Notes: generated from the letters alone by a model not told the origin. Positions 427 to 45,859 are shown, counted from the first letter of the stretch. The stretch is DNA of 64,000 bases from Hemiscyllium ocellatum (GCF_020745735.1 NC_083426.1:20584001-20648000), one strand, 5' to 3'. Made by a program: numbers and translations.

Positions 427-500
427 GTACAAGATGGTGGGTGGAGCTTATCGGCAATGTACAGCTGAGGGATGGGATGGTGATGTCCCAACCTGTGAAC
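427..500 (+). CDS. Gene 1 exon b1 (second half of CCP)
   Basis: ttctag|G...gaac|gtaagt; 74 nt; YKMVGGAYRQCTAEGWDGDVPTCE. Confidence 0.92.
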
Positions 501-962
501 GTAAGTTATGTATAACTGTTTTGTGAAGTGACGCTTTGCTTTTCAATATCAGTAAAGCTGACTTCAATGTATTACGCTCTAGTGTTAGTTGACGTACAAA
601 TTGTCTTCCTGACAATATTTTGACATCCTTCAGCTTGGAATTCTGATTTCTTGTAATGGGAGGAAATATCTATTCAATGCTTTATTCAGCATTGTATTTT
701 AATGGAGCACAACTTGAAAAATGAGAAGTGAATGTTCATTAAATAAATTGTGCTCTGTGCAGATTTTTATTCACCTGTCTAAGTCCATACGGTCGTGTTT
801 TGCTGTGTGATGAGACACTCTTTTGAATATTATTGGAGCTGGAGTTGACACCAAGTGGTGTTTATGTCATGGGAGATCCACAGCAAGGAAATGGAGGAAG
901 ATAAAGGAAAAGTCAAGTTGACGTTAATAATTCATACTTTAATTGTATCAAAGTTCCAGAGT

Positions 963-2140
963 TGAAATGAGAGTGATAACTCTTGAGATCAAGGTTGCAT
1001 TTGACTGAATGTGGCATCAAGGAGCCCCAGCAAAAGTGGAATCAGTGGTTATCAGGGGACAAACTCGCTGGTGGTTGATGACATACCTGATACAAAGGAA
1101 AATGGTTGAGATTGTTGGAGGTTAGTCATCTCAGCTCCAGGACATCTCTGCAGGGGTTCCTCTGGGTAGAATCCTAGGCCAAACCTGCATCAGCTGCTTC
1201 ATCAGTGACCTACCCTCCATTGTAAGATCAGAAGTGGGAATGTTCGTCAATGATTGCACAATGTTCAACATCATTCATGCCTCCTCAGATACTGAAGTAG
1301 TCTGTGTCCAAATGCAATAAGATCAGGACAATATTCAGGCTAGGGCTGACCAGTGGTAAGTAGCATTCACACCACAAAAATGCCAGTCTATGATCATTAC
1401 CAATAAGAAACAAATCTGACCACCACTCCTTGACATCCAATAGTGTTATTATCTCTGAAGCCCCCACTATCAACATCCTGGGAGTTATCATTGACCAGAA
1501 ACTCAAATGGATTCCCCACATAAATGGAATGGCTACAAGAGCAGGTCAGAGGATAGGAACACTGTGGTGAGTAACTTTTCCTTCTGCCTCCCAAAAAGCA
1601 TGTTTACCATCTACAAGGCACAAGTCAGGAGTGTAATAAAATACACTCCACTTGCCTCGAGGAGTGCAGCTCCATCAACACTCGAGAAGCTTGACACCAT
1701 CCAGGACGAAGAAGCCCACCTGATTGGCACTGCATCCACAAGTATCCACTCGTTTCACCACTGATGTTCAGTAGCAACTGTGTGTGCTATCTACAAGATG
1801 CACTGCAGAAATTCCCTGAAGATCTTCAGACAGCACTTTCCAAACCCATGATTACTTTCATCTAGAAGAATAAAGGCAGCAGATATATGGAAGTACTACC
1901 ACCTTCAAGTTCCCTCCCAAGCCAGCCACCACCCTGACTTAGAAATATATCACTGTTCCTTAATGTCACTGGGTCAAACTACGGGAATTCCCTCCCAAAG
2001 GGCATTGTGCATCAACCTACAGCAGGTGAACTCCAGCAGTTCAAGAAGGCAGCTCAGCACCACCATCTCAATGGCAATTAGGGGCGGACAACAAATGCTG
2101 ACCAGCCAATGATGCCCAAACCTCACAAAATGAATAAATT
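963..2140 (+). mobile_element. Degenerate CR1/L2-group LINE (RT 3' part and 3' UTR)
   Basis: RT remnants (GVPxGxILG, TIYKAQVRSV, LDTIQ) with frameshifts; related 3' ends at ~23935-24300 (+) and ~13005-13265 (-). Confidence 0.75.
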
Positions 2141-2972
2141 TTAAAAAACTATTCTCTTCCTCTTCCATTCAAAATTAATTGTGATAATGTGTTGTGCCTG
2201 GCAGATCTAGTTTTCTTAGTGGTCTTATATTGTTGCTTTAGTTGGTGCTTGTGTGAAAGGAATAGATGCTAAAGAAGTGACAAGAATGGTGAATGACCAT
2301 AGTCATGTGGAGGCAAAGCAGATAATGCTGTGGGAATGGATATCCATGATCCTTCAGGTGAATAAGAGTAACATGAGAATCTGAATCACAATTCAAGAAA
2401 TGAGAGAGAGAGAGAGAATTGTGAACTGTGAGCTAGTTAGTCTAACATTAGTCATTGGGGGAAATGCTGCAAAATTTATGAACTCTTTTGAAAATTTCAA
2501 TAACACATTTAGAAAAATACAGTATGATCAAACCAAATCAGCATGGTTTTATTTAAAGGGAGTGGTGTGTGGCAAATCTATTAGCTATTGTTGAGGTTAT
2601 AACTATTGGGGTAGATTCTGGACTGTCAGTCAATGCAGAACACATGAATTTCAGCAAGATATTTATTAGGATGCCACATGTAAGGTTCATTAGCAATACA
2701 AAGATTCACAGAGTTGTTTCTTGGTTTAAAAAGTTCTAATGGACTTGTAACTCAGGACCAGATATTCTGATGGTCAGAATCAATGGAGCAATGTAAACTA
2801 GAGTTGCAAATTGAGAACATGTGGAATGCAGAGACTGCTGACTGTGGGAATTGCAAAGAAATTGACCTTTCGATGGACAAATCTCTTGCATCTGGAATAT
2901 TCTGAAAGAATGCATTCAAGTCAAAGAATTCTGAAAATGCTGTCTTACCTCAACGTAATTACCCAGGAGAAT

Positions 2973-3255
2973 AGGTGGCAGGGTAGCTCAGTGGTTAGCA
3001 CTGCTGCCTCACAGAGCCGGGGTCTCAGGTTTGATTCCAGCCTTGGGCGACTGTCTGTGTGGAGTTTCCTCTGGGTACTCTGGTTTCTTCCACATTCCAA
3101 AAATGTGCAGGTCAGGTGATTTGGTCATGCTAAATAGTCTGTAGTTGTCAGGTGCATTAATCAGAGGTAGGTGGGTTACTCTTCAAAGGATCAGTGTGGA
3201 CTTGTTGGGCTGAAGGGCCTGTTTCCACACTATAGGGAATTTAATCTAATCTAAT
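2973..3255 (+). mobile_element. tRNA-derived SINE (HE1/V-SINE type)
   Basis: A box (tagctcagtggttag), B box-like (ggtttgattcc), core ctgtctgtgtggagttt, (ctaat)n tail. Confidence 0.8.
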
Positions 3256-4209
3256 TGAGAGAATTAAAACCTGAGTCTAACTCTTGGATAAATGCAAACC
3301 TAACTTCACAACTGACCCCCAGGCTATACCCGTTTGCCCCCTATGCTGACACTCTCAATGTTCCTGAAGACCAGACCCAATTTTCAAGCACCAACTCACC
3401 TTTTTTCATACATGGCACTCTGGATCCAACACCATCTATGTTGCTTACATTGCCTAGGCTGACCCCTCCAGATCACAACCAGCCTGACCCTGCCTTTGAT
3501 TTACAAGCCTTGCTCCATACCAACCTGAGACTGCCGCCCCACCTCATACCCAACAAACAAGACTTCCGGCCTGATGTTTACCAGACAAGCTAAACATCCA
3601 CCAGAGATCTGAACCAAACATCCAACATGGGACCTGATGGGGCATGTTGGTGAGGGAGGGTTGTTCGCTGTCAAGGTGCAATTGTTAGGTGGACATTCAC
3701 ACTGACCAATGAAATGCCAATAGGATAATGAATAATCACCCACATACTCTTCAGACTTCACATCATCTACTGCCACGATAAGGATGCATAGAACAGAACT
3801 CGAATGTCTTCTAATTTTCATAATTTTTTTGTAAAGGGACTCTTAAATATTTTTGTCCTCCATGGCTACTAATCCCAAGCGTTTAGTTTTTATATGGATA
3901 CCTAACATTGGCTGGAATTTAATGGATCCCAGAAAAATGTGAATGGGTGTGGGGGTATTATGTCCAAATATTCTCCAATGAATGCTCCCTACTCCAGACA
4001 CCTGTGTTCTGCGATTCAACATAGATCCTCAGGCTGGGCATTGGAACATTCATAGGAGCAGCCACTGCTCCTGGTAGATATGCTGCCAATGGAAATCTGC
4101 CATTCTCTGTCTGGCTGCTAGTGGGCAGGGAAACTTCTACACTCAAGAAATTGGGTACATGGAAGGGCCCAAGTTAGCCAAAGAAAGCTCTTCTATCAAA
4201 TTAGACCTA

Positions 4210-4468
4210 TTCCATGGAAGTGACGAGAGGTTCAGAATAGTTCACCCATGTATGGAATGAGTTGCCAGAGAAAGTGGTGGAGGCTGGTACAATTGCAACA
4301 TTTAAGAGGCATTTAGATGGATATATGAATAGGAAGGGTTTGGCGGGATATGGGCCGTGTGCTGGCAGGTGGGACTAGATTGGGTTGGGATATCTGGTTG
4401 GAATGGACAGGTTGGACCGAAGGGTCTGTTTTCATGCTGTACATCTTTATGATTCTATGACTCTATAA
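4210..4468 (+). mobile_element. CR1 LINE 3' end
   Basis: WNELPEKVVEAG remnant and tatgattctatgactctat tail. Confidence 0.8.
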
Positions 4469-4749
4469 CTGATGCTGAAGATTCTGGTTATAGAATGAAA
4501 TCAGTCCATTGTGTTCTTGTATTGCTGTTGAGGATTGATGTTGTCTATTAGTGTCCAGATAGTGTGAGGGTCTGTAGATAATACCATAAAAACTGGAGAA
4601 TAAATTCCAAATTTAAGGTAACTTGATAATCTGAACAGTTATGTAATTGTATATTTCATCTTCATGTTAACAAGCTGTGGAAAAAAAACTGATTGGGATT
4701 TTGGATTTTTCTGATAATGCTGCTCCTTCTCATTTTATTTTCTGTATAG

Positions 4750-4846
4750 CAATAAACTGTGGAAACCCTGGTTCAATTCTGCATGGATATTATAAAGCAC
4801 CAAAATGGACAGTTGGAAGTAATGCTACTTTTTATTGTGACATTGG
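4750..4846 (+). CDS. Gene 1 exon a2 (first half of CCP)
   Basis: tatag|ca...gg|gtgagt; 97 nt; INCGNPGSILHGYYKAPKWTVGSNATFYCDIG. Confidence 0.92.
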
Positions 4847-5713
4847 GTGAGTCTTCAGGATATAACTCACTGAATGATTTTAATGAAGCACTGTGCTATT
4901 GTAAAGTAGTAATTGAGACAGTGTTGGATGACCTCATTCATTGCATTTCTCATGGAAGCTCTTCATATTAACTCTTAGTGAGGCTTCCTTCCTATGGGTT
5001 CAAACATCACGTTAAACAAAACCATTGGTAATGATCAAGGTGGAAATTGTTAGTGTTAGAATTTTAATTTTAATGTGAAAATAAAACTGTTAGATCTATT
5101 ATCAGTGGGAACATCCATAAGCCAGGCCACAAACCAAGTGTCCCTTGATGATGTTTCTACAAAAATGTAGAGTTATGTTAGAGTCAGCAGGACATTGAAT
5201 TTGAATTAGAATTAGGTTTTATTGTCACATGTACTCAAGGACAGAGATACTGGAAAGTGTACAAAGTTGTCATTTCTGGTGCCAACTTTGGTACAAAAAT
5301 GCTTAGGTGCAAAATCTTAGGTATAAATTAGAAAAATATAGGAATAATATTAAAAGTTAGCATTATAATCTTTCTAAAGCAGAGAAAGAGAGAAATGGAA
5401 TAAAAGCAGATAGGTTTGCATGGGGCTTCACCTTGAAGCCATGGGCTGTCAGTGGGCCTCATTTCGAGTCTGTGCTATGTTAATGTTTTGCATTTGCGCT
5501 GTACTTTTATGAAGTTTTTTTAAACAGCAATGCAGCTGCATTTGATTCCTATTTCATTGTTCTGTTACCCTAGAACAATGTTTGATTTATTTTCTTTGTT
5601 GACAGTTGAATAAATTTTTCTTTGATGATCCTCAGAACTCCTACATAGATAATGACACTTTTTTTTCAGTTAATCTTCATGTCAGATGACTGGTGGCTTG
5701 CCTTTTTTTTTAG

Positions 5714-5787
5714 ATACAAACTAATTGGCAGAAATTATAGACAGTGTACAGTTGATGGTTGGGACGGTACGGTTCCATCCTGTGAAT
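5714..5787 (+). CDS. Gene 1 exon b2
   Basis: 74 nt, AG/GT; YKLIGRNYRQCTVDGWDGTVPSCE. Confidence 0.92.
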
Positions 5788-7176
5788 GTAAGTTATGTTT
5801 CCTTTTTATATTTCTCTATTTTGTAAAGTGACTGGGCTGCATGTCTGAAAAAAAATGATTGAATTAGTTACAGTGAGTCATCATGGCCCATGACCAAATT
5901 TTGTTTCTTACACTGTTTTGACATTCTTAAGCCTGGATTTATTTCTTTGAATCAGAGAAAAAAAAGTATTCATTGCTTTTTCATTCACATTACATTTGTA
6001 AAAAATCATTGCAGGTATACTAAGCAATGACCAGTTATCAAATCGTCCCTACTCTTTCCAGAAGAACATATTTTTCTACCTGATCACCATGTTAATTTGG
6101 AGTAAAAAAAACTGAATTTCGGTGGGTGAAGGAAAACTTAGGATGTACTCATTTTAGTTGCATTTGGAATTAGCAATTTGGGTCCATAGAAATTAAAGGC
6201 ACAGGAAATTATCCAATTGATGCTAATTATCCATGTTTAAATTATACAGAGGGTGTCAACCAGATTTGAGTATTGTGGGGCACATCTAGGGTTTGCCATC
6301 AGGGCAGTCTATGGATTATTGTCAGCTGTATCTGGGGAAAGGAGGGAATGTTATCAGCTGGGCCCAGAGGTCAGTCCTATCAGCCAACCCCATGAATTCT
6401 CAGTTGTGGAATTGGAGAATTTCATTGGTCTGGGCCGGGCACAGATGTCTGCTGTGGGATGGTGGGGGTCAAAGCAGAAGACTGATAGAGTTGTGGATTG
6501 AAAAACTTGAGAACAATTATTCCTGAGCCCATCAGATGTCATTTGAGCATCAGAGATTGAATGGGATATGTGTGACTCTCCCTTGACTCATGAAAGCAGC
6601 CCAGCAAATGCTGCAGTCTTGTTATGGCATTCCCTCATTGTCAGCCACACAATGGCCAGTCATGGGGCCCAGTGTAAGAAGGGAAGCCCATTGAAAGCAA
6701 TTTCAATGCCCTTCCTTGTGACTCACTGCACACAATTCTCTAGTGACTAATTCGACACATCACCATTCCAACCCCTATTCACATCATGGTGTCCTCAGAT
6801 TCAAATGAGATCCTTTTTCTGGGTCCTGGTGCATGAATGGCAGCAGCCATCAATTACAGAGACACTTCCAGCAATGTTCTGCTGCTTAGCATTGGCTCAA
6901 AAAAATGGATACGTAATATATATATAATGATGACTTGCTGTTGAAGATTGGTGCAGGTCCGTTTATATTACTTTGCAGATGGACAGCAGCTTGTTATTCT
7001 GAGGTTTTACAGATCAAGAAAATGTTTTCATTTTGTATTGCCATATTCCTGAAAATTGAATTTATAATTTAGGATAACCAGATTTTGTTGTCAATGTCAT
7101 TGTGCTCTTCATGTTTGTGTTAAATATTTCAGTGAAAGATGTTGTTGTCGAGTTTGGAGTTTTGTTTCAAGCTAAT

Positions 7177-7785: not shown

Positions 7786-7882
7786 CAATAACCTGTGGTA
7801 ACCCTGGGGAGATTCTGAATGGACATTATCAGACACCAAATGATACAGTTGGAAATAAAGTGTTTTATTATTGTGACTTTGG
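7786..7882 (+). CDS. Gene 1 exon a3
   Basis: 97 nt, AG/GT; ITCGNPGEILNGHYQTPNDTVGNKVFYYCDFG. Confidence 0.92.
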
Positions 7883-8491: not shown

Positions 8492-8565
8492 ATACAAGAT
8501 AGTGGGTAGAGATTATCAACAGTGTACAGCTGAGGGTTGGGATGATGACGTTCCATCCTGTGAAC
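8492..8565 (+). CDS. Gene 1 exon b3
   Basis: 74 nt, AG/GT; YKIVGRDYQQCTAEGWDDDVPSCE. Confidence 0.92.
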
Positions 8566-9670: not shown

Positions 9671-9767
9671 CGATAACCTGTGGCAACCCTGGTGAGATAT
9701 TGAATGGATATTATAATGCACCAAATAAGACAGTTGGAAATAAAGCTACCTTTTATTGTGATAGAGG
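9671..9767 (+). CDS. Gene 1 exon a4
   Basis: 97 nt, AG/GT; ITCGNPGEILNGYYNAPNKTVGNKATFYCDRG. Confidence 0.92.
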
Positions 9768-10151: not shown

Positions 10152-10225
10152 GTACACAATTCTGGGTAATGGTTATCGGAAATGCACACCAGAGGGTTGG
10201 GATGGTGAGGTTCCATCCTGTGAAC
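10152..10225 (+). CDS. Gene 1 exon b4
   Basis: 74 nt, AG/GT; YTILGNGYRKCTPEGWDGEVPSCE. Confidence 0.92.
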
Positions 10226-11252: not shown

Positions 11253-11349
11253 CCATAAGTTGTGGTAACCCTGGGAAAATTCTGAATGGACATTACAAGG
11301 AGGCAAATGAGACACTTGGAAATAAAGTTATTTTTTATTGTGACTTTGG
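11253..11349 (+). CDS. Gene 1 exon a5
   Basis: 97 nt, AG/GT; ISCGNPGKILNGHYKEANETLGNKVIFYCDFG. Confidence 0.92.
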
Positions 11350-11951: not shown

Positions 11952-12025
11952 ATACAAGTTGGTGGGTAGAACTTATCTTCAATGCACAGCTGAGGGGTGG
12001 GATGGTGATGTCCCATCCTGTGAAT
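11952..12025 (+). CDS. Gene 1 exon b5
   Basis: 74 nt, AG/GT; YKLVGRTYLQCTAEGWDGDVPSCE. Confidence 0.92.
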
Positions 12026-14208: not shown

Positions 14209-14305
14209 CAATAACATGTGGTAACCCTGGAGAGATCCTGAATGGATATTACAGTGCTCCAAATAAAACATTTGGAAACATGGTTCATTTTTATTGTGAT
14301 ATTGG
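14209..14305 (+). CDS. Gene 1 exon a6
   Basis: 97 nt, AG/GT; ITCGNPGEILNGYYSAPNKTFGNMVHFYCDIG. Confidence 0.92.
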
Positions 14306-14667: not shown

Positions 14668-14741
14668 ATACTCAATACTGGGTAGAGATTATCGGCAATG
14701 TACAACTGAGGGTTGGGATGGCAAGGTTCCATCTTGCGAAC
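14668..14741 (+). CDS. Gene 1 exon b6
   Basis: 74 nt, AG/gtatgt; YSILGRDYRQCTTEGWDGKVPSCE. Confidence 0.92.
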
Positions 14742-16078: not shown

Positions 16079-16175
16079 CAATAAACTGTGGTAACCCTGG
16101 CAAGATTCTGAATGGGTATTATGAGGCACCAAACAACACAATTGGAAATAAAGTGATTTTTAATTGTAATGTTGG
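16079..16175 (+). CDS. Gene 1 exon a7
   Basis: 97 nt, AG/GT; INCGNPGKILNGYYEAPNNTIGNKVIFNCNVG. Confidence 0.92.
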
Positions 16176-16763
16176 GTGAGTTTTCAAAATATAAATTTAT
16201 TGTATAATTTTGCTAAAAAAAAATACTAGTTTAATGTTAATGGCAAAGCAATTTTCAGATGGCTATATTTCAATGTTTACATTTCTGATAACAAATCCCC
16301 ATGTAAACACAAATGAGGCTTTTAGTCTTTAAAATTTCAGAGTGATTAATGCTGAGAATCTTTTGGTCTGATTTTGGAACATTAATGGAAAGATTAAATT
16401 GGTAAATGCATTACACCTAGAACCATATACCTAGATCACCACTGGATGGCTGCACCTGCTGATTCTTAAAAATGTGTAAATCATATTGTGATTTGTTGCC
16501 AACAGGAGTTGTACACACCAATGCTCCTTCTGTGTATTGTACTTTTATGGAGTCTGATCAGAATTTACTTTTAGCAATAATATGATTCCAACTTCATTTT
16601 TTGCCATCAATCTTGTTTCACTTTATTTTAACGAGCAATTTGTTGATAGGTGAATATATTTTTCCTTTTTAGAACTCAAATTCTTACCTGGTCAGCAAAC
16701 TATATTGTTTTCACAATTGCTGTTTGGGTCATTGATACAGGTGGTTTGCTTTGCTTCTCCTAG

Positions 16764-16837
16764 GTACAAAATGGTGGGTAGAGATTATCGACAATGTACA
16801 GCTCAGGGATGGGATGGTGATGTTCCAGCTTGTGAAC
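16764..16837 (+). CDS. Gene 1 exon b7
   Basis: 74 nt, AG/GT; YKMVGRDYRQCTAQGWDGDVPACE. Confidence 0.92.
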
Positions 16838-17357
16838 GTAAGTTATGTTTCCTTGTTTTGTAAGGTTAATAGCAGCAGGCAGTGTTCCTGATAGAATTGC
16901 TAGCAATGGAAAATTGCAACCTGTTGATTGTTCCATTAAGAGAGAGAATTATTCCTCACCTCAGGCTTTGATCACAGAGAAGGTTGGACAAAGACACTTA
17001 AAACACATTGGGCCACCTTCATGAAAATGGTGCAGGCTTCACACTGTAGTGTTTTCCAATTGATGTTGAGGATTCTGCTGATAGAATAAAATCAGTCCAT
17101 TATGTTCTTGGATTGCTGCTGAATGTTGTTGCTGGTCAAAATAGTGTGCCGTTGTGTGATTGTAGGTTTAGGACTGTCGTGTGTTTAAAATACCATAAAA
17201 TTGGAAAAAACAATTCCAACTTTATTGTGACCTAATAATCGGAACAATTATGTAGTGGTATATTTTGTCTTCATATTGAAAACTTGTGAATAGCAATGAA
17301 AAGACTGGTGGGGAATTTCAATTTTTCTGGTACTTATGCCTCTTATTTTCTGTATAG

Positions 17358-17454
17358 CAATAAACTGTGGAAACCCTGGTTCAATTCTGAATGGATATTA
17401 CAAAGCATCAAAATGGACAGTTGGAAGTAATGTTACATTTTATTGTGAAGTTGG
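17358..17454 (+). CDS. Gene 1 exon a8
   Basis: 97 nt, AG/GT; INCGNPGSILNGYYKASKWTVGSNVTFYCEVG. Confidence 0.92.
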
Positions 17455-18056
17455 GTGAGTATTCAGTATCTAAATCACTAAATAATTTTAGTAATGGCCT
17501 CTATTATTTTAAAGTTGTTATTTAGATGACCACATATTCAATATATTTCTTATAGAAGCTCTTCACATTAACTCTGAGTGAGGCTTCAATCCTAACCAGA
17601 AGATTAAGCAAAATACTTAGTACTGATCAAGTTGGGGAATGTTTGTGTTGGAATAGGAACATTAATGCAAAAATAGAACTGTTAAATGTGTCATTGGTTG
17701 AAAAATCCATGAGCAGAGAGACAAACCAGATGTCACCAGGTGCTGTTTCTACAAAATGATTAACTTGTATTAGAAGTCAGCATGACAGTGAGTTTTATAT
17801 GCCTATGTTTCATCTGTGCACTGTAGTTTTATGGGGTCGAACCTATATTTTCAAGTTTAAATATAAATGCAACAGCATTTGATTCCTATTTTAGTGTTCT
17901 GCTACCCTACAGCTATATTTGATTCATTTTTCTTTTGTGAGGGTTTAGTCCATTTTTCCTTCATGAACCTCAAAGTTCTTACATATTCTGCCTAGTGACC
18001 CATTTTTCCAGTTAATTTTCCTGTCTGGTAACAGTTGGCTTACCATTCTTTTTTAG

Positions 18057-18130
18057 ATACAAAATTATTGGCAGACATTACCGACAATGTATGGCTGATG
18101 GGTGGGATGGTGAGGTTCCATCCTGTGAAC
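18057..18130 (+). CDS. Gene 1 exon b8
   Basis: 74 nt, AG/GT; YKIIGRHYRQCMADGWDGEVPSCE. Confidence 0.92.
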
Positions 18131-20362: not shown

Positions 20363-20459
20363 CAATAACCTGTGGTAACCCTGGGGAGATTCTGAATGGA
20401 CATTATAAGACAGCAAATGAGACAGTTGGAAATAAAGTGCATTTTTATTGTGACTTTGG
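20363..20459 (+). CDS. Gene 1 exon a9
   Basis: 97 nt, AG/GT; ITCGNPGEILNGHYKTANETVGNKVHFYCDFG. Confidence 0.92.
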
Positions 20460-21050: not shown

Positions 21051-21124
21051 ATACAAGATAGTGGGTAGAGGTTATCGGCAATGTACAGCTGAGGGTTGGG
21101 ATGGTGATGTCCCATCCTGTGAAT
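21051..21124 (+). CDS. Gene 1 exon b9
   Basis: 74 nt, AG/GT; YKIVGRGYRQCTAEGWDGDVPSCE. Confidence 0.92.
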
Positions 21125-22402: not shown

Positions 22403-22499
22403 CAATAACCTGTGGTAACCCTGGTGAGATTCTACATGGGTATTATAAAGCACCAAATAAAACAGTTGGAAATAACGTTACATTTTACTGTGACATCGG
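22403..22499 (+). CDS. Gene 1 exon a10
   Basis: 97 nt, AG/GT; ITCGNPGEILHGYYKAPNKTVGNNVTFYCDIG. Confidence 0.92.
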
Positions 22500-22887: not shown

Positions 22888-22961
22888 ATATGCAATGCTG
22901 GGTCGTGATTATCGGAAGTGTACACCTGAGGGTTGGGATGGTGAGGTTCCATCCTGTGAAC
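22888..22961 (+). CDS. Gene 1 exon b10
   Basis: 74 nt, AG/GT; YAMLGRDYRKCTPEGWDGEVPSCE. Confidence 0.92.
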
Positions 22962-24661
22962 GTAAGTTCTATTTCTCTCTTTAGGAAAGTGATGAATATA
23001 TCTTCCCAGCTAAATGATAGAGCCATTCTCAATACAGTGCTGGAACGTTGGTTCAATTTCAGGTTTTCTTCCTTATAATATTCATCCATCTTGGAGTTCA
23101 TTCATCATGGAATAGGAAGAAATAATGAGTAATGATTTTATTCAGCATTGCATATTAAAAAAAACTAAAGTGTGATTTGAGAAATGATATTTCATTAAAT
23201 CAATTGTTTGTTTGAAAATTGAATTATCTGCCTTCCACATATATTAATGTTGAAGCATAGAATATATATTCCTAGCTGGATATTAAAGTGGAATGCATCA
23301 TTTAGCAGGTACTAACATTAGTGTAACTGACAAGCATGTAATTTTGGCCATTGGAAATCTAGGAAGTGGAAGTGACAGGTCAAGGAAAAGTGCAGCCAAT
23401 ATCACCAGTCTGTAATTAAACCTGGCATATACTGTCTTCTTTTCCCTTCCCACACACATTTTATGCTCCAAGTAGTTCTGTGTTTACATTTAACTGAATT
23501 AGTTGTGATATTGAAGCATATTGTACTGATGAAGCTGAAGTGAAAGTAATAATTTTAGAGGGGAGACAAAAAACATAATGGCAGACTTTTATGGTAATGT
23601 TGCTGAGGTCGAGTGTTAAATGCTGTGGAACAAAAAGTAAGTGGTCTTTGAGATGACACTGGTACCTGAAGTTATTCCTCCACTTTGGTGTTCTACCTTT
23701 TTCTTCTCAGTCCCTAAGGATTAAGTGTGACTTGCTTCCATTCTGGTTCGGTGGGTTTTGAGATTGGTATTAAGTCCAATCTGTGATTTGCAAACTCTGC
23801 CACATTTGGAGCAGGTGGTGTTGGAATGATTGGATAAATGAGTTATACGGGAGTTGTGAAATTTCTCAGAGGCCTCAACCTCACCTTTCAATGTTCCTGA
23901 TGGAGTCTTTCTATGTTTAATGTTTACAACCTCCACACCACTGATGTTCAGTTGCAGTGGTGCATTTTATCTACAAAATGCACTGCAGAAATTCATCAAA
24001 GATCCTGAGACAGCACCTTCTAAATCCAGGAGCACTTCCATCTAGAAGGATGGAGAACAATACCACCTGCATATTTCTCTCCAAGTCACTCATCAACTTG
24101 ACTTGGGAATATATTGCCCTTCCTTCAGTATCACTGGGCCAAAATCCTAGAACTCTCTCCTTAATGGCATTGTGGAATCAGCTAAAGCACATGCATTGCA
24201 GCAATTCAAGAAGGCAGTTCACCACCACTTGTTCAAAGACAACAAGGAACAAGCAATACATCCTGGCAGTTTGCGACAACCACATCCTACAAGTAAATAC
24301 ATTTTTTAAAGTTCTGAATTTCTGTTATCATCCTCAGATTCCTGTCGTGAATGAATTCCAAGTCAAGCAGTTGCTTCAAGAGCCTCATACAAGAATGACA
24401 TGCCCTGCCCAGCAGTGTTGGTTTTGTGTAATTATTGCCTTTCTACTGGGCAATTTTTAACTGCCACAGAGTAAAAGGCAGCATTCTATTAATCATTTTG
24501 AAAAAAAAAATTAGATTCCAAAGTTAATTTGCCAAACTAACCAATTATATAATTGCATTATATCTTTCATGTTAAATACCTTGCAAATTACAATGAAAGA
24601 AATGGTGAAGATTTTGGAGTTTTGTGACATTTCTACCTTTTCCATTTTATTTTATGTGTAG

Positions 24662-24758
24662 CAATTAACTGTGGTAACCCTGGCAATATTCTGAATGGAT
24701 ATTATGTGGAACCAAATGTCACAGTTGAAAATAAAGTTACCTTTTATTGTAACGCTGG
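24662..24758 (+). CDS. Gene 1 exon a11
   Basis: 97 nt, AG/GT; INCGNPGNILNGYYVEPNVTVENKVTFYCNAG. Confidence 0.92.
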
Positions 24759-25341
24759 GTGAGTATTTACTACATTAACTAAGAACTAATTTTAGTGAAA
24801 GACTGCTATTCTAATGTTTGTTCAGAAGACATTTTCAGGGAGTTATATTTTTGATATTTTGCATCTCTGTTAAGTGATTTCCATGTGAACATGAGTCAGG
24901 CTTCCAGTTCAATGCTGAGCTGGTAATTTGTTTTTTTAAAAAAGTCTTTATCAACATACCTGCATGGGTTTGGAATATCTATAGGCAGATAGAAATGTTA
25001 AACGTGATTCTAATGCCGAGGCCTATATGCTGAGATCAACACTGGAAGACATATTAAGCAGTTTTCCTCCAAATGCTTCAACTATATTTTAATTAGTTCC
25101 AAGGCATGCTGGTGCATCATGTTCCTCCTGTAAACATTATTTTACATACAGGTGATCTACATCGTACTTAGCAATAGTGCAATTGTATTTGATTACAAAT
25201 GCACTTTCTTGCGTGTGTGTTTCTCAGTAAATAGATTTTTCCTCTGTGGACTTTTAATTTCCTATCTGCTGTGCCAACTTTACAACTTCTCAAAATAAAA
25301 TTCAGGCCATTGATACAAGTGGTTTGTGTCTGTTTTTCCAG

Positions 25342-25415
25342 ATACAAGCTTTTGGGTCGAGATTATCGGCAATGTACAGCTGAGGGATGGGATGGTGATG
25401 TTCCCTCCTGTGAAT
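25342..25415 (+). CDS. Gene 1 exon b11 (last CCP half)
   Basis: 74 nt, AG/gtaagg; YKLLGRDYRQCTAEGWDGDVPSCE. Confidence 0.92.
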
Positions 25416-25647
25416 GTAAGGGTTGTTGCCTTTTATTTTTACCCTAAAATTAACTGACTTGCTTGTATGTGTCAAATGATTGAGCCACTTTCATTAATTG
25501 TCATGTAATGTTACACCACATCAAGTTCTCCAGGATTTTAGCATCTTCAACCTTTGAGTGGAATGGGATTTAAACAATTGTTCAATGTTTTGATTCAGTC
25601 TTTAATGAGGATTTTGAACTGTGAAATGACAAATGATCATTTGATTT

Positions 25648-25865
25648 CGTGGTTAGCTGCCTTACAGCTCCAGGGACCTGGATTTTATTTCTGCCTTGGA
25701 TGATTCTCTTTGTGGAGTTTGCATATTCTCTCCATGTCTGTGTGGGTTTCCATTGAGTGCTCTGGTTTCCTTCCATAGTCCAAAGATATGCAATTTAGAT
25801 AGATTGGCCACATTAGATTGCCCTGTAATGTCCAGGGATGTGCAGGTTAGGTGGGTTGACCATGG
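25648..25865 (+). mobile_element. tRNA-derived SINE (V-SINE type), degenerate
   Basis: tgtggagtttgcatattctctccatgtctgtgtgggtttcc core. Confidence 0.7.
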
Positions 25866-26795
25866 CGTCTTGCTGTATGACCCCAATATCTTTTCCACTT
25901 TTGAACCATCACATACATTCTCACTTGCACAGTAAACTTTGTGTGATCATGTGCAAAACAGATAGACATTAATAGGATGCACAGCCAGATAAGACAGAGA
26001 TACATGAAGTAACTACATTTTAAGGGGAGAGGAAAACGTGAGTGGCGAGGAACTTGAAAGAGAGACTGGAGTTTAAGGGATAAGAAAGTGAGCTGTAAGA
26101 ATGCAAGCACAAAAGACCTGGAAGTGAAGGGCTAAGCACGAGAAAAGCAAAAGGCAGGAAGTGAGAAGTATTTCTTTACAGTTTTCTATCAGCGTTATGT
26201 GATGAAGTTGTGAATCTATGAAATCAGTTTCTATGGTGATATGCAAAATTTCTCTAAGTGGGCTTTTAACTTTTGATCAGCTGAGATCCTCAGTTGAGTA
26301 AAGTTACATTCAGCAGAAATCATCATTTGTTGTGACATCACTTGTTACAACATCACTTTAAGGACTGAATATGTTTATGAATCAGATCAGGATGCGTGTA
26401 AAGGTCTGCAGTTGTGTCTTTGTGAAGTCAAGTACTCCTATAAATATTCTGAGTGTTGAGTGAACCTATTTCAGATTTTCAAGTAAAATGAACCTACACC
26501 ATTTACCAATCTTGTATGAGAGTAGTAACTTCGTATTATGAAATCAACACAACAATGCTGATGTACAATATCCCCAATGCTATAGTTACTTCAGTTTTGA
26601 TGCTCAGAAACAGTGATAGAGGATGGAGAGGCTCTGTTGTTTTTCTTTCAAAACCATTTTTTAAAATTTACATGCAACAATTGGTGATGTGTAGTTAGAC
26701 CTTCAATAGTGAGCTGGCATAGTGAAAAAAAACACATAATCTTTTAAACCATTAATTTCTGTGTTAATAACTTGGTCTCTTTTAAAATCTTACAG

Positions 26796-26825
26796 CACAA
26801 AGTGCACTTGTAGGAATGGCTACTG
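26796..26825 (+). CDS. Gene 1 short juxtamembrane/TM-start exon
   Basis: cttacag|...actg|gtaagt; 30 nt, phase 1-1; SQSALVGMATG in frame with both neighbours. Confidence 0.7.
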
Positions 26826-27194
26826 GTAAGTAGGAAAACCAGATAATACAAATATTATTAGCTGCACTGAAGTGCTTTGATTTAGTATTTGCTAACATTT
26901 GATCATCAAAACTGTACATTTAAAATGTAATGACTGAATTAGTGTTTTGGTTGTTCAAACTGATAAGTATATAAATCTTGAGTCAGAATGATTATTAATG
27001 AGGCTTTAATACTTTTTAATAATGTTTAGAAATGAGATTTTTTAATCATTGTGCTGGTTTTCTTAGTAAGTGAGGCTTTGAGCCAGATGTGTGCCTTGTG
27101 TGTCTAATAAACAATTTAGGATAAACATAATTATATCCTATAAAAACAATTAATAATTCTCATGCTGGATTTCATAGACAACTCATCTTTCTTA

Positions 27195-27680
27195 GTCAGT
27201 CCAAAAGTGTGGTGCTGAAAAGGCACAGCAGGTCAGGCAGCATTTGAGGAGCAGGAAAGTTGACATTTTGACCATAAGCTCTTCATCAAGAATGTGGGGT
27301 GAGAGGGGTGGTGCAAGGGGGGTGAGAGACAAATGGGACAGGCTGAGGCTGGGGAAAGGTATCTGGGAATGCAATAGGTAGACGAAGATGGGGGTGATAG
27401 TGATAGTGAAGGGTGGAGCGGATAGGTGGAAAGGACAGTTCAAGAAGGTGATGCCGAGTTGGCAGATTGGATGTGGGATTGGTGGGGGGAGGGGAGATCA
27501 GGAAACTGGTGAAATTAACATTAATCCCATGTGGTTGGAGAGTCCCAAGACAGAAGATAAGCTGTTCTTCCACCAGGTGTCATTGGCTAGAATTTGGCAG
27601 TAGAGGAGGACTAGGACTTGCATGTCCTTGGTGAAGTGGGAAGGGGAGTTGAAGTGTTTGACTACAGGGTGGTGGGTCAT
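27195..27680 (-). mobile_element. Penelope-like element 3' fragment (GIY-YIG C-terminus plus terminal repeat)
   Basis: Minus-strand PVVKHFNSPSH...DMQV and EEQLIFCLGTLQPHGIN; adjoining end matches the palindromic elements at 38.2, 54.1 and 58.4 kb. Confidence 0.75.
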
Positions 27681-28994
27681 TTTTCTTCACACACAGTTCA
27701 GCTTGCCTATTCTAAAACTGAAGCATGTGTGTTTGACTGCCTTGGTTAATAGAAATAGATTTCTTAAGTAGTTATTTTTAACTGTCTGTCAAAGTTCTGA
27801 TTGTCTTTATTAACTAGTTCCAACTTTCACAGAATGGAAAACTGTTTCTGGTGCTGATAAGTTGTCTTGAAGCCTGTTTTATAATGTTATCCACAAATGT
27901 AAGAATGAATAGATCTATGTCCAGTGAACTGATTATTTTAATCTGAATTTACCATCGATAATAAGAAAAATGGAACTCCTCCTTAAGGAGAAAAATAGAA
28001 AAAACTTGTTGAAACTGAAACTGAAATAATGAATAAACAACATGGAATTCAGAAGGGAAAGACTTGCTCCTTTGCTCCCACTCTTGAACTTGACCCCCAG
28101 AGGAACACAGTCACTCATTGTTATTTTCATCAGGATGCACTCAGAATTGCCCTGGAGGCGGGCTTGTGATCCAATTAAGAAGGGTGGATGGGCAATCCAA
28201 GTTGGAGGGCCAATCAGAGGCCTTCCAACTTGAAAGGAACAACAGGCTGCAATTGAAGGGAAGTTAAAGAGAGGTTGCTTCAAAACAGAGGCATCTTCTC
28301 TCTTTCTTTTGGCTTTTTCCTATATTTACCATCTTCCAACACTGTTGAAAGATTACCTTTCTATAATTTTTATATATGATATATATTTCCTCATGCTAAT
28401 CCTCCCCATCCATCTGGGCTGGGGACTGAGATTGCATGCTAACTTGCCTTCACCAGTCGTTGTGTTCTTTGGTGGCTCACGGGTCTTGCGATGCAACATT
28501 AATCCAATTCACATCCTGAGGACAGACAGAAGTATTACAACTAGGAGATCATGTTAGTTGTGCAAGATTCTTTGGTATCTTGATTAATGATTGAGAGAGA
28601 AAATGCACACACAAAACTCAAGGTACAGCTGTATTGAACCCAAAGAAAAATTCCAACTATTACTGTCTTGAGATTTCAAGGATAATGTTGGTGGGGATAT
28701 TGTTTAGAGTCATAGTTACCTAGAAGCAGGTAAAAAGCTAGGCAAATATGTGATTTTAGACCCTGGATTTTGCAGTCAGTAGCAAAGCAAAAACATCTGG
28801 AACTGACAACAGAAAGTTTTGCCAAGATATCTCACAATCTCAGTGTTTGAGAACATCAGATAAAATAGTGAAACTATACACTTTGGTATCTTTCACTTAG
28901 TTGTGTAGAATTTGAGATATAGTTTATTTGATTAAATCCAGCAGTATGAATGAAAATAATTTACAGGAATGTAAAATCTATAAAGGGATACTAG

Positions 28995-29280
28995 TATAGT
29001 AGTCATGGAAATAGACACTTCAGTCCAACTTGTCCATGCTGACCAGATATCCTGAATAAATGTAGTCCCATTTTTCAGCATTTGGCCCAGATCCCTCTTA
29101 AACCCTTCCTATTCATATATATAATCCAGATGCACTTAAATGTTGTAATTGTACCAACATCCTCCACTTCCTCTGACAGCTCATTCCATATACACAATAC
29201 TATCTGCATGAAAAAGTTTCCCCTTGGGTTTTTAAAAATCTTTTCCCTCTCTCCATAAATCTATGCTGACTAGTTTTGGA
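28995..29280 (-). mobile_element. CR1 LINE 3' end
   Basis: Similar to 13361-13650. Confidence 0.7.
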
Positions 29281-29433
29281 ATTGAAATGTGTCCAACTTA
29301 GAGAAATGTTACCAATTTAAGAAATGTTTCAACCTTTTTTAAAAAATTAGTCTGGCTAAGGAATCTCTACTTTCGAGTATCCGCATGTTTATTTCTAATT
29401 TAGTCATTGTGAATCTTATGTATACATTTTAAG

Positions 29434-29518
29434 GAATTAACATGGGTGTTGTTGCTGTCGTTGGCTTCCTTTTTTGTGCCGCATGCCTTTATCAAAAACG
29501 ATCATTATCAAACAAAGG
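29434..29518 (+). CDS. Gene 1 transmembrane exon
   Basis: ttttaag|...aaagg|gtaaga; 85 nt, phase 1-2; INMGVVAVVGFLFCAACLYQKRSLSNKG (hydrophobic stretch then basic residues). Confidence 0.85.
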
Positions 29519-30339
29519 GTAAGAATATTTACTATTTGTTAGATAGTTTTCTATCTTCAGAAAAGCTATTCATAAATTTTTAATCTTTATTCCACCATTC
29601 TCCTCATCTATTATTCTAAGCTGCCCTTCATACCTCTGACTTTCCCCTAGTCTGCAACACAAATTTTTCTATTGCTTTCTTGTTGAACTTTACTTGATTT
29701 ACTTGATTATAGCTAAGAAACTTGAAAATAAATGCAGGTTTTCCATATAAACATTCAGTCAAGCAACTAGTTCAAAAGCTTTGCCATTTGGCCATCACTT
29801 TCTTAACTCAAGCAGGGCCACTGATTAGTAGTATCTGAAAGACCAGCAAGTGTGTTGAATCTTGTGCAATAGTGAGTCATTTGGTAAATGTTTTGAGATT
29901 GGAAAAATGAAATTCCCAGCACTGAAGAGCAAATTCGACATTCCATCCAAGATTTTAATGATTTGACAAGAATGTTGCTAGTGAGCGGCAAGGACCCTGC
30001 TTTCATGCACTAACATCTCTATATTACTTAAGCTTGCTTCATTTATATGCATATCACTTTTTTTTCTTACAGCTCACAAGAAAGTCTGAGCAGAGATAAA
30101 ATAGAGAATCTCAGCAGGTCACACAGTGGAGAGGGAAACAGAGTTAATGTGTAGAGACCCATATGACTCTTCTTTGGAAATGGTTATGATGCTGCCAAAC
30201 CGACTGTGTTCCTCCAGCACTTCTCATTTTTATTTAAAATTTTTTGCATCTGCTATAATTAAGTCTGAGCAGATACCTGCCAGCTCCAGCTCTGTTTGGT
30301 TGGAATATAACACAGTAATGTAGCTGAATCATCTGCTGG

Positions 30340-31560
30340 AGTGAGACTTGAGGGGCTGGGTGGTCATCTAATCCCTGTGGCCATTAAAGTAACAGCTGCA
30401 TTGAACTTTTATTGTAGTTCTCTGCTTCAAAGAGTGCACGGGTTGCTGTATCTGCAACCCACAGATTTGTCAAGACTGTTACCAATGCAATTGATGCTGA
30501 ATGACAGCACTCATCACTTTTTCCTGTTCCCTCATGATGAAGTCAGTACTGGAGCACAAGTTGTAGGCTTTGTCAATATAGCTTGCCTTCCTCCATGTGC
30601 ATGGCCCTACAGATTATACATGTCGCATTGAAAGGGCAATTGAATATGACTGACTTCATTGTTAAAAAGAGTTCTCCTTGGTAAATGTACAAGTAATTGT
30701 GATCATCAGTATCTCATCTTAGAAATTGACAACATGTTTCTTGGATCTACTATGATGTCTATATACTTGATAACTGTTAGGTTCCTGCTTCATTCTAAAG
30801 ACCAGATGCCTGAAAAGGTTGACTGCAGGGAATAAAGGGCTAACTTCTCCAAACCTGGATGATGATTCCCTTTGTGCAATCCTCTGACTGAGGCCAAGTT
30901 AAGATACAATACAGCTCATTTTTCAACCATGTCTATCGTGAAACCGACAAAAGACCTCTTGAAGATGAGGTTCCTCTGTTTGTATTGGACTGGAGGGTTG
31001 GTGGGGAGGAGGGGGAGGAGGTTTGTTGCACTCCAGACACAGTGTACCATGTAATCCCTGCATGTTGTGCTCTGCATAACTGGAACAAAGTTAAAAATCA
31101 AATACCAGATCATAGTCCAACAGATTTATTTGAAAGCACTAACTTTCAGAGGACTGCTCCTTCATTAGGTAGCTGTGGAGCAGGATCATAAGGCACAGAA
31201 TTTATAGTAATAATTACCGTGTCATGCAACTGAAATAATATATTGAACAAACAGCTCCACAGCGACCTGATGAAGGACCAGCACTCTAAAAGTTAGTGTT
31301 TTCAAATAAACCTGATGGACTATAACCTGGTGTTGTGTGATTTTTAACTTTGTCCACCCTAATCCAAAACCGGCACCTCCACATCATAAGTGGAACAGGC
31401 AGAGAGAGAATGTGATGAACACTGAAAAGTTGGGTAAGCAGCTGCAGTCTTCCAAGAAAGAAGAGGAGGACATGAAGTGGGAGTAACATCATTCAAGATG
31501 ATAGAACAGTGCAATTTTTGGTGCATTGAGCCAGACAGGATTTAATTGACACCTGCTTCT
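30340..31560 (+). mobile_element. Degenerate PIF/Harbinger transposase remnant interrupted by a Penelope-type element
   Basis: IPVAIKVTAALNFY, PLTEAKLRYNTAH, LKMRFLCL and ACCALHN motifs with frameshifts. Confidence 0.7.
31085..31385. mobile_element. Short Penelope-type inverted-repeat element (family 2)
   Basis: acaaagttaaaaatca...tgatttttaactttgt inverted arms; flanked by near-duplicate cataactggaaca / cataagtggaaca. Confidence 0.7.
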
Positions 31561-32533
31561 AATAGACAAAAGCTGGGTGATCATTCATTAGCTGCAAATT
31601 TGATAGTCAAAATGCAGTCTCTTCAGTCCCAGAAGCAAATGTAGCATCTTTTATTTTTTGTTATTTCACTTTAGTTGTTTAATAAAAGTTAACGTTAGCA
31701 ACAATTTCAAGGTTTTGACAATGTGACGCTGCCACATTTCAACACTGACAAGACGTTATGCTATGCTGAGCAACTAGAGAAAGTATAAGAAACCTTTGGA
31801 CACAGTTCTAACAGGGTTTAATGTTGAGAATAGATAGCGTCTGTAGCTTCATTCTTGTAGCCATATTTCAATGACGGTTGAACAGACTGATGCTGATGTA
31901 AAAAGAGAATACATTTATAATTATAATCTGCTATTCCCAATGAAGTGTCACCTGTATGCCCTCAGATGCTTTTCTTTTTCATTTTGCTCCCATTATGTCT
32001 TTTATGAAAGGCTATTCCTAGCTTGAATTGGTGCACAGCTTTAAATTTGGTCCCAGCAGTGGCAAGTACTTCAGGTGCTGATAAGCTCACAATAGCACTG
32101 CTGCAGAAATGTACAGCATGCATGGATGAGTGTTGTTGAAGGAAATACTCCATGAATTCCTTGAAAAATTTTAAATTTTTGGTAAAGTTAACCTTCATGG
32201 ATTTTTATTTGATTAGCAAAACACTGTATAAATCAAACATTGAAACCTAATGCTTACTACATTTTCCCATGGCTGGAAATAACAAGCTCCATATGAGTAA
32301 GATGTATTCTGGCTGTCAGAATTGATCAATTTATTTTGTAACAATTACAACCAATGTTGCCTTGAGGAATATGAAGAATTTTAGTTAACTTAAGCTATTT
32401 AATCTACTTAAACAAAGTAGTGCATTTTGCTTGCTGCATGAAGTTTACAGTCTTTTGCAAATGTACTGTCAGATACACGTAATGTTTTATCATAATTATA
32501 TTTTAATCCATGCACATCATGTTTCCTTTTTAG

Positions 32534-32621
32534 GGAATATCATCTTGCCAGCAGTATTCCCATGAGCTCTGATGACAACCAAATGGGCCCTCATTCTGAT
32601 TCCTGTAATCGTCCAGTATAA
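32534..32621 (+). CDS. Gene 1 cytoplasmic-tail exon (coding part; exon probably ends at 32647)
   Basis: ctttttag| acceptor, phase 2; (G)EYHLASSIPMSSDDNQMGPHSDSCNRPV*; KG|xY junction recalls the CD46 tail; donor aag|gtaaat after 32647. Confidence 0.75.
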
Positions 32622-33102: not shown

Positions 33103-33108
33103 AATAAA
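33103..33108 (+). terminator. Candidate polyadenylation signal of gene 1
   Basis: First AATAAA after the putative last-exon acceptor (32962/32965), followed by T/GT-rich sequence; other AATAAA occur near 34621, 34770, 35019 and 35075. Confidence 0.35.
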
Positions 33109-45853: not shown

Positions 45854-45859
45854 CTTACT

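What the first reader, a model, noticed from the sequence alone, without database searches (positions are those of the whole stretch)
427..32621. Membrane RCA-like protein built from a tandem array of only the split-exon CCP2 module
Seen: 21 half-domain exons in strict b/a alternation, every a exon 97 nt and every b exon 74 nt. All have canonical splice sites, all four Cys and the Trp, and no stops or indels, while the introns are visibly diverged and TE-laden. The array runs into a 30-nt exon and the TM; I found no CCP3/CCP4 or Ser/Thr/Pro-rich exon between them. The module has the same exon sizes as CCP2 of gene 2 and closely matches its sequence. Established: in CD46, factor H and C4BP-alpha the split exon encodes only CCP2; C3b/C4b regulation needs 3-4 different consecutive CCPs; CR1 repeats mixed multi-CCP units. 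Inference: a lineage-specific paralog kept under purifying selection that amplified a single module, acting as a multivalent receptor, a pathogen decoy or a glycosylated stalk. I know of no described protein with this layout but cannot search.
Basis: partly seen in the sequence, partly recalled or inferred. Interest (0 to 1): 0.82.

Follow-up and report, generated by a model that had tools for sequence, protein, structure and literature searches.

The report
Shark CR1-like gene, CCP2-module stalk
The window holds the last third of one very large shark complement-receptor-like membrane gene, in which a conventional 8-domain head is followed by 34 intact copies of a single split-exon CCP2 domain; this layout appears in automatic annotations of related sharks, and I found no paper that describes it.

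Summary
All 21 half-exons in the window have the stated sizes (97/74 nt), AG/GT splice sites, four Cys plus Trp per module, and no stop or indel. The array continues 74 kb upstream of the window, for a total of 34 modules in 68 exons.

The array is not a CCP2-only protein. Further upstream on the same strand lie a signal-peptide exon, CCP1-5, three CCP3-derived CCPs and a 21-aa linker exon. They join the array, a 30-nt exon, a TM exon and a tail exon in one open frame of 2538 aa (82 exons, about 181 kb, 42 CCPs).

RefSeq models in related sharks have the same layout. Chiloscyllium punctatum "complement receptor type 1-like" has 46 modules. A more distant shark homolog has 17.

The modules are under moderate purifying selection: paralog dN/dS is about 0.3 and ortholog dN/dS is 0.47. 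Exons have no indels, while introns have hundreds.

The head is basic and evolves faster than the gene's introns. The array is acidic, and 31 of 34 modules carry an N-glycosylation sequon.

Best reading: a CR1/Crry-like regulator or receptor on a long glycosylated CCP stalk whose length can change in frame. I could obtain no direct RNA evidence. This is a new variant of a known kind.

The parts
427..500 (+). module 24, exon b (74 nt)
4750..4846 (+). module 25 (subfamily W), exon a (97 nt)
5714..5787 (+). module 25, exon b
7786..7882 (+). module 26 (F), exon a
8492..8565 (+). module 26, exon b
9671..9767 (+). module 27 (T), exon a
10152..10225 (+). module 27, exon b
11253..11349 (+). module 28 (H-like), exon a
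11952..12025 (+). module 28, exon b
14209..14305 (+). module 29 (T-like), exon a
14668..14741 (+). module 29, exon b
16079..16175 (+). module 30 (V), exon a
16764..16837 (+). module 30, exon b
17358..17454 (+). module 31 (W), exon a
18057..18130 (+). module 31, exon b
20363..20459 (+). module 32 (F), exon a
21051..21124 (+). module 32, exon b
22403..22499 (+). module 33 (T), exon a
22888..22961 (+). module 33, exon b
24662..24758 (+). module 34 (V), exon a
25342..25415 (+). module 34, exon b (last CCP exon)
26796..26825 (+). 30-nt juxtamembrane exon (SQSALVGMAT), phase 1-1
   Evidence: Splice-site scan. The peptide is present in the ortholog models and the frame stays open.
29434..29518 (+). 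transmembrane exon (85 nt) with a basic stop-transfer stretch
   Evidence: it occurs once in 304 kb
32534..32621 (+). last coding exon (cytoplasmic tail, stop TAA at 32619-32621); the first AATAAA/ATTAAA hexamer downstream is at 33103
1..426 (+). 3' end of the intron between exon a of module 24 (upstream of the window) and its exon b. The other 47 array exons and the 11 head exons lie upstream, at window coordinates -148412 to -91 (G000:C61:20435588-20583909).

Best explanation
The window holds the 3' third of one gene of about 181 kb in the shark RCA cluster. The gene encodes a CR1/Crry-like type I membrane glycoprotein of 2538 aa with 42 CCPs.

Shown: the order of parts is signal peptide; CCP1, split CCP2, CCP3, CCP4, CCP5; three CCP3-derived CCPs; a 21-aa Asn/Ser-rich linker; 34 CCP2-derived modules of 57 aa (97 + 74 nt exons); a 10-aa juxtamembrane exon; a TM exon; and a 38-aa tail.

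Inferred: the basic, fast-evolving N-terminal CCP1-4/5 is the working site, binding C3b/C4b and acting as factor I cofactor and/or decay accelerator. The acidic array acts as a long, semi-rigid stalk that holds the head far from the membrane. Its modules carry one N-glycan sequon each in most cases and are joined by uniform 4-residue linkers.

Mechanics of the array: every module is flanked by phase-1 introns. The intron inside a module makes the two half-exons 97 nt (3n+1) and 74 nt (3n+2). An a/b pair can therefore be duplicated, deleted or skipped in frame, but a single half-exon cannot. This explains the strict alternation and the easy change in copy number by unequal crossing-over: 34 modules here and in C. 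plagiosum, 46 in C. punctatum, 17 in a more distant shark.
For: Gene structure: 82 exons, all AG/GT, all in phase, with one stop at the end. The head exons map in the same order as XP_072419238.1. The TM and tail exons are unique in 304 kb.

Family: Pfam finds Sushi only, 54 stretches in the C. punctatum ortholog. Head CCP1-5 aligns in order with CR1 917-1213, Crry 3-316, MCP, SPICE and factor H CCP1-4. The module best matches factor H CCP2, Crry CCP2 and DAF CCP3. The neighbour is a C4BP-like gene with the same 97/74 split of CCP2.

Origin: the modules group with the gene's own CCP2, away from the other CCP2 copies (support 99).

Selection on the array: paralog dN/dS averages 0.34. Exon identity is 0.89 against 0.79 for the flanking introns. 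Against C. punctatum, exon divergence is 2.6% and non-exon divergence is 4.5% (p = 5e-5). There are no indels in 1816 exon columns and about 500 indel columns outside exons. Array dN/dS against C. punctatum is 0.47 (p = 0.03). A stray CCP2 copy in an upstream intron has lost its Trp and its splice donor, which shows what an unconstrained copy looks like.

Head against stalk: the head has net charge +15 and pI 8.7. The array has net charge -67 and pI 5.0, and 31 of 34 modules carry a sequon at module position 19 or 25. Head amino-acid identity to C. punctatum is 86.5% and array identity is 94.6% (p = 8e-9). Minimum nonsynonymous change per site in the head is 1.39 times the intron divergence (p = 0.009). 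In the array it is 0.56 times.

Copy number and isoforms: modules correspond one-to-one by position with C. punctatum, which has one extra 12-module block. C. plagiosum RefSeq isoforms differ by whole modules or by the linker.
Against: There is no direct transcript evidence for this genome. The one read-laying run was rejected by a filter. The only RNA hint is that small runs of uncertain type hold 0.12 of the sampled words of a stretch in which exon-only words make up 0.11. The joining of head and array rests on frame continuity and on gene models in relatives, not on a sequenced cDNA. The stalk role is inferred from charge, sequons and evolutionary rates, and no binding data exist. The head's rate ratio uses introns from the 3' end of the gene as the neutral yardstick and a predicted protein as the ortholog. 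A dN/dS of 0.3-0.5 would also fit modules that bind something.
Confidence: 0.6

Rival explanations
1. The CCP2-derived modules are themselves ligand-binding units. The five subfamilies in recurring W-F-T-V and W-H/W-F units would form repeated multi-CCP sites, as in the long homologous repeats of CR1. The protein would then be a multivalent immune-adherence receptor or a target for pathogen binding, not a head on a passive stalk.
For: The five subfamilies are well supported (93-100%) and recur in the same order. Each module keeps its identity across species: ortholog identity of 0.88-1.0 exceeds the best paralog identity of 0.66-0.91. The modules are under purifying selection. CR1 sets a precedent for repeated sites (PMC2188588, PMC6683126).
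Against: Block duplication alone explains the recurring order. The array is strongly acidic and nearly every module carries a sequon in the stretch between Cys I and Cys II, whereas the gene's own head CCP2 is basic and has no sequon. Known regulatory sites need three different CCP types (PMC6683126, PMC4868954), and here all modules are of the CCP2 type.
Confidence: 0.2
2. One reading: a separate protein made only of the CCP2 array, the TM and the tail, produced from its own promoter (or as an isoform), with the upstream CCP1-8 exons belonging to a different, soluble gene.
For: Several RefSeq models in Stegostoma, Rhincodon and C. plagiosum begin inside the array or in CCP7. A 7.2-kb intron precedes module 1.
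Against: Those models start at internal Met residues without a signal peptide, so they look like truncated models. Module 1 begins at a phase-1 acceptor. No credible signal-peptide exon with a phase-1 donor lies in the 11.5 kb upstream of it. The head exons have no terminal exon of their own in the region searched, and the frame runs through. Two independent C. punctatum annotations join the head to the array.
Confidence: 0.1
3. The array is a non-functional by-product of tandem duplication, or an assembly artefact, and is not translated as predicted.
For: No direct RNA evidence was obtained. Tandem arrays are prone to assembly error, and the extra 12-module block in C. punctatum is 98-100% identical to its neighbour.
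Against: All 68 exons keep their exact length, splice sites, frame and Cys/Trp residues, although paralog dS is 0.14-0.43. Exons have no indels against C. punctatum, while introns have hundreds. The order of modules is conserved in C. punctatum, and the C-terminal modules also correspond in Stegostoma and Rhincodon. The 304 kb contain no N.
Confidence: 0.03

Closest known systems
Human complement receptor type 1 (CR1, CD35)
   Same: A type I membrane protein of the RCA cluster made only of CCPs (30 in the common allotype), with a TM and a short tail. It was built by internal tandem duplication, and its length varies by unequal crossing-over. It is the best PDB sequence match for both the head and the array. 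RefSeq names the C. punctatum ortholog 'complement receptor type 1-like'.
   Different: CR1 repeats a 7-CCP long homologous repeat of mixed CCP types, and each of the repeats LHR-A, -B and -C carries its own binding site (PMC2188588, PMC6683126). Here the repeated element derives from one CCP type, the split-exon CCP2. It forms 2- and 4-module higher-order units, all next to the membrane, with a single conventional head. Orthology to mammalian CR1 was not tested.
Rodent Crry and human MCP (CD46)
   Same: The N-terminal CCP1-5 aligns as one stretch in the same order with Crry CCP1-5 and with MCP CCP1-4. All are membrane-anchored regulators.
   Different: Crry and MCP have 4-5 CCPs, and MCP has a Ser/Thr/Pro-rich O-glycosylated stalk. 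Here the stalk position is filled by three CCP3-derived and 34 CCP2-derived N-glycosylated CCPs, and there is no Ser/Thr/Pro-rich exon.
Apolipoprotein(a) kringle IV type 2 array (from my own knowledge, not tested here)
   Same: One two-exon protein module is amplified in tandem into a long array that can change length in frame, and copy number varies.
   Different: The fold (kringle), the protein (secreted) and the lineage (primates) all differ. The LPA copies are nearly identical, whereas the shark modules are old (dS 0.14-0.43) and each is conserved individually.
Uncharacterised shark RefSeq/GenBank models: XP_072419238.1 and GCC21153.1 (C. punctatum), XP_043572599.1 and isoforms (from the accession series, apparently C. 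plagiosum), XP_048409358.2 (Stegostoma tigrinum), XP_048467916.1 (Rhincodon typus), XP_067913343.1 (species not shown by the tools)
   Same: These are orthologs or homologs with the same layout. They have the same juxtamembrane, TM and tail peptides, and modules correspond one-to-one by position.
   Different: They are automatic predictions named SVEP1-like, CSMD-like, MCP-like or CR1-like. Several are truncated. I found no paper that describes them. Copy number differs: 17, 34 or 46 modules.

Membership tests
RCA (regulators of complement activation) gene family | Ectodomain made of tandem CCP/Sushi modules only | tested here: met
   PF00084 matches 54 stretches in the C. punctatum ortholog. 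The two other Pfam rows have no stretch that passes on its own. In this genome all 42 modules have four Cys and one Trp.
RCA (regulators of complement activation) gene family | CCP2-type module encoded by two exons, other CCPs by one phase 1-1 exon | tested here: met
   The gene's own CCP2 is split 97 + 74 nt, and CCP1 and CCP3-8 are single 186-nt exons. The neighbouring C4BP-like gene has the same split.
RCA (regulators of complement activation) gene family | Location in a cluster of RCA paralogs | tested here: met
   A C4BP-like gene starts 15 kb downstream, 70-78% identical to Mustelus C4BP-like CCP1-4.
RCA (regulators of complement activation) gene family | Three to four different consecutive N-terminal CCPs in the same order as known regulatory sites | tested here: met
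   phmmer gives a single stretch over residues 1-304 of the head against Crry 3-316 and CR1 917-1213, and also matches factor H CCP1-4, MCP and SPICE.
RCA (regulators of complement activation) gene family | Signature motif order M5-M3-M1-M2(-M4) of regulatory CCPs (PMC6683126) | not tested
   The motif matrices and the CoReDo server are not available in these tools.
RCA (regulators of complement activation) gene family | Binding of C3b/C4b with factor I cofactor or decay-accelerating activity | not testable with these tools
   This needs recombinant protein and shark complement components.
CR1 (CD35) in the strict sense | Long homologous repeats of 7 mixed CCPs, several of which carry a binding site | tested here: not met
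   The repeated element is a single CCP2-derived module in five subfamilies forming 2- and 4-module units. There is only one conventional head.
MCP (CD46) | Four CCPs followed by a Ser/Thr/Pro-rich O-glycosylated segment, TM and tail | tested here: not met
   There is no Ser/Thr/Pro-rich exon. Only a 10-aa exon lies between the last CCP and the TM, and a 21-aa Asn/Ser-rich linker lies before the array.
   Eight non-array CCPs lie upstream in frame, and the ortholog models include them.

The most novel reading that the evidence does not exclude
Sharks would have evolved a distinct solution for a long complement receptor. In it, a single split-exon CCP2 module is turned into an acidic stalk of more than 100 nm with one N-glycan per module. 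The stalk's length is set by copy-number change and by in-frame skipping of modules, and it carries a positively selected regulatory head. Stalk length would itself be a functional and polymorphic trait, as CR1 length allotypes are in humans, or the module subfamilies would form new repeated binding sites.
Probability: 0.3. Interest if true: 0.65.

Novelty: new variant of a known kind. Interest (0 to 1): 0.5.

Why it matters
Very little is known about membrane complement regulators and receptors in cartilaginous fish, the oldest living lineage with a full antibody-plus-complement system. This gene shows a CR1-sized receptor (42 CCPs) assembled by a different route from mammalian CR1, by amplifying one two-exon module instead of a 7-CCP block.

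The constraints also separate cleanly into a fast-evolving basic head and a conserved acidic glycosylated stalk. That gives testable hypotheses about what long CCP arrays are for.

It is also a practical warning. Automatic names for this gene (SVEP1-like, CSMD-like, MCP-like) mislead, and several reference models are truncated or split.

Tried and rejected
- **Read laying.** The one read-laying run, meant to show splice joints on window 24500-30400, was rejected by a filter at 25711-25751 and still counted. I have no read-level RNA evidence.
- **Sequencing-run searches.** Neither sequencing-run run found a run on record as RNA. Small runs of guessed RNA type hold 0.06-0.17 of the words of an exon-dense stretch. 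This is suggestive only.
- **Structure prediction.** AlphaFold2 on a four-module block with a 19-row alignment gave mean pLDDT 37. I did not use the model and ran no fold search.
- **Ortholog DNA for the head.** I tried to fetch C. punctatum or C. plagiosum DNA for the head exons to compute a true dN/dS. The gene range was too long in one case and the file too large in the other. I used a minimum-change estimate against intron divergence instead.
- **Possible spliced transcript.** P0005 looked like one but is a gene model on a small genomic contig.
- **Internal start of the array gene.** A scan for a signal-peptide exon just upstream of module 1 gave only weak candidates.
- **More than one gene in the array.** I rejected this because the TM and tail exons occur once in 304 kb.
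- **Literature.** Five full-text searches found no description of this gene or layout.
- **Earlier scan notes.** They held nothing relevant.


Full report
**Observation**

Direct-repeat search finds two interleaved repeat families on the + strand between 390 and 25437. Cutting them at their splice sites gives 11 exons of 74 nt and 10 exons of 97 nt in strict b/a alternation. Every exon is preceded by AG and followed by GT. Joined, they read as one open frame of 57-aa CCP modules, each with four Cys and one Trp.

The 97-nt exon starts in phase 1 and ends in phase 2, and the 74-nt exon restores phase 1. A single half-exon therefore cannot be skipped or duplicated without a frameshift, while an a/b pair can. 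This accounts for the strict alternation.

The 30-nt exon is 26796-26825. It is the best AG/30 nt/GT candidate in the interval, and its peptide is present in the ortholog proteins.

**The array is three times larger than the window shows**

The window is G000:C61:20584001-20648000 in a 3.98-Gb genome. I fetched 180 kb upstream and 60 kb downstream; neither stretch contains an N.

tblastn with one module and a Cys-pattern scan show the array running back to window coordinate -73570. There are 34 modules in 68 exons. Every exon is exactly 97 or 74 nt, every one has AG and GT, and there is no stop or indel.

**It is part of a larger gene**

A profile of the ten in-window a-exon peptides, searched against 1.84 billion proteins, found shark proteins with up to 24 matching stretches. 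They include:
- XP_072419238.1, "complement receptor type 1-like" of Chiloscyllium punctatum (3223 aa);
- GCC21153.1 of the same species;
- XP_048409358.2 of Stegostoma tigrinum;
- XP_048467916.1 of Rhincodon typus.

The C. punctatum protein reads: signal peptide, CCP1-5, three CCP3-like CCPs, a 21-aa linker, 46 modules, and then the same juxtamembrane, TM and tail peptides as the window.

All of its N-terminal exons map in the same order in this genome upstream of the array, on the + strand:

| Part | Window coordinate of first base |
|---|---|
| Signal peptide | -148412 |
| CCP1 | -124191 |
| CCP2 (97 + 74 nt) | -116693 and -115626 |
| CCP3 | -114560 |
| CCP4 | -113220 |
| CCP5 | -110697 |
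| CCP6, CCP7, CCP8 | -88090, -87224, -85320 |
| Linker | -80825 |

All have AG/GT sites and phase 1. Joining the 82 exons gives a 7617-nt frame with a single terminal stop, or 2538 aa. The TM and tail exons occur only once in the 304 kb, and I found no convincing signal-peptide exon just upstream of module 1.

The in-window part is CCP2-only; the gene is not.

**What family it belongs to**

- Pfam finds Sushi repeats only.
- The head aligns as one stretch in the same order with Crry CCP1-5 and CR1 917-1213, and with factor H CCP1-4, MCP and the poxvirus regulator SPICE.
- A single array module aligns best to factor H CCP2, Crry CCP2 and DAF CCP3. These are the CCP2-type positions.
It is 70-78% identical to a Mustelus C4BP-like protein over CCP1-4, and its CCP2 has the same 97/74 split.

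This is an RCA-cluster gene.

**Origin and internal structure of the array**

In a maximum-likelihood tree of the 171-nt modules, the 34 modules group with the gene's own CCP2. The grouping excludes the CCP2 of the neighbouring gene(s) and a decayed intronic copy (support 99).

The modules fall into five subfamilies with support of 93-100. I call them W, H, F, T and V. Their order along the gene is 1, 2, T, V, W, H, W, H, W, H, W, F, T, V, W, H, W, F, W, F, T, V, W, H, W, F, T, H', T', V, W, F, T, V.

The array therefore grew by duplicating 2-module and 4-module blocks. One visible trace is the 12.56-kb spacing between repeat copies in the window. The array is not a run of one uniform module.

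**Selection**

- Between paralogous modules, mean dN is 0.19 and mean dS is 0.56, a ratio of 0.34. Within subfamilies the ratio is 0.16-0.54.
- Exons of paired modules are 89% identical. Their flanking introns are 79% identical in the columns that can be aligned.
- Window 4971-34000 aligns in order with a C. punctatum contig at about 94% identity.
- In that alignment, exon substitution divergence is 2.6% and non-exon divergence is 4.5% (p = 5e-5). There are no indels in 1816 exon columns and about 500 indel columns elsewhere.
- Array dN/dS against C. punctatum is 0.47 (p = 0.03).
- A CCP2 copy stranded in the CCP5-CCP6 intron has lost its Trp and its GT donor. It serves as an internal control for decay.

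Purifying selection on the array is real but moderate.

**Age and copy number**

Modules 1-24 and 25-34 correspond one-to-one by position to C. punctatum modules 1-24 and 37-46. C. punctatum modules 25-36 are a 98-100% identical copy of its modules 13-24. The last six or so modules also have counterparts at the same positions in Stegostoma and Rhincodon.

Paralog dS within the array (0.14 or more) is several times the ortholog dS against C. punctatum (0.04).

A protein from a more distant shark, XP_067913343.1, is 65% identical over the array. It has several CR1-like repeats of mixed CCPs, then 17 CCP2-like modules, then a related TM and tail.

C. plagiosum RefSeq isoforms differ by exactly 57, 114 or 228 aa, or by the 21-aa linker. 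This suggests in-frame module skipping, though reads mis-mapped between similar modules could mimic it.

**Head and stalk differ**

| Property | Head (CCP1-8) | Array (34 modules) |
|---|---|---|
| Net charge | +15 | -67 |
| pI | 8.7 | 5.0 |
| Amino-acid identity to C. punctatum | 86.5% | 94.6% (p = 8e-9) |
| Minimum nonsynonymous change per site, relative to intron divergence | 1.39 (p = 0.009); CCP4 alone 2.3 | 0.56 (first 24 modules) |

In the array, 31 of 34 modules carry an N-x-S/T sequon at module position 19 or, in most W modules, position 25. The head's own CCP2 is basic and has no sequon. All 33 junctions between modules have four residues between the flanking Cys.

These facts fit a ligand-facing, possibly positively selected head on a conserved, glycosylated, fairly rigid stalk. 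This step is inference; I could test no binding.

**Limits**

I could not obtain read-level RNA evidence. The run search gives only a hint: two small runs hold 0.12 of the sampled words of window 16079-18130, where words lying wholly inside exons make up 0.11. The structure prediction failed. Head dN/dS could not be computed from DNA.

**Verdict**

I found no published description. This is a new variant of a known kind, a CR1/Crry-like RCA membrane protein, and is of moderate interest.

Noticed in passing
upstream of the window: G000:C61:20477875-20478664 (window -106125 to -105336): A decayed CCP2 copy (97 + 74 nt) lies in the intron between CCP5 and CCP6. Its Trp is replaced by Cys and its second half-exon lacks a GT donor. 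It is not in the ortholog protein models.
   Followed up: partly
upstream of the window: window -88090 to -85135: Three tandem 186-nt exons encode near-identical CCP3-derived modules (CCP6-8). This is a second, smaller single-module amplification in the same gene.
   Followed up: partly
   Followed up: partly
head exons, window -124191 to -85135: Amino-acid change in the head against C. punctatum exceeds the intron divergence of the same gene (ratio 1.39; CCP4 alone 2.3). This hints at positive selection. It is an estimate from a predicted protein, not a codon model.
   Followed up: partly
P0099 (XP_072419238.1) residues about 1218-2585: In C. punctatum, modules 25-36 are a 98-100% identical repeat of modules 13-24. 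This is either a very recent 12-module duplication or an assembly or annotation duplication.
   Followed up: no
window 954-2000: An intronic dispersed repeat has more than 40 copies across the genome at 76-80% identity. Other repeat families recur throughout the introns (for example 25656-25831, 27203-27295 and 29004-29280).
   Followed up: no
window 40215-41252 and 44840-45854: Two 1-kb segments between the two genes are 90.8% identical. Two short tandem repeats lie at 39237-39357 and 43934-44022.
   Followed up: no
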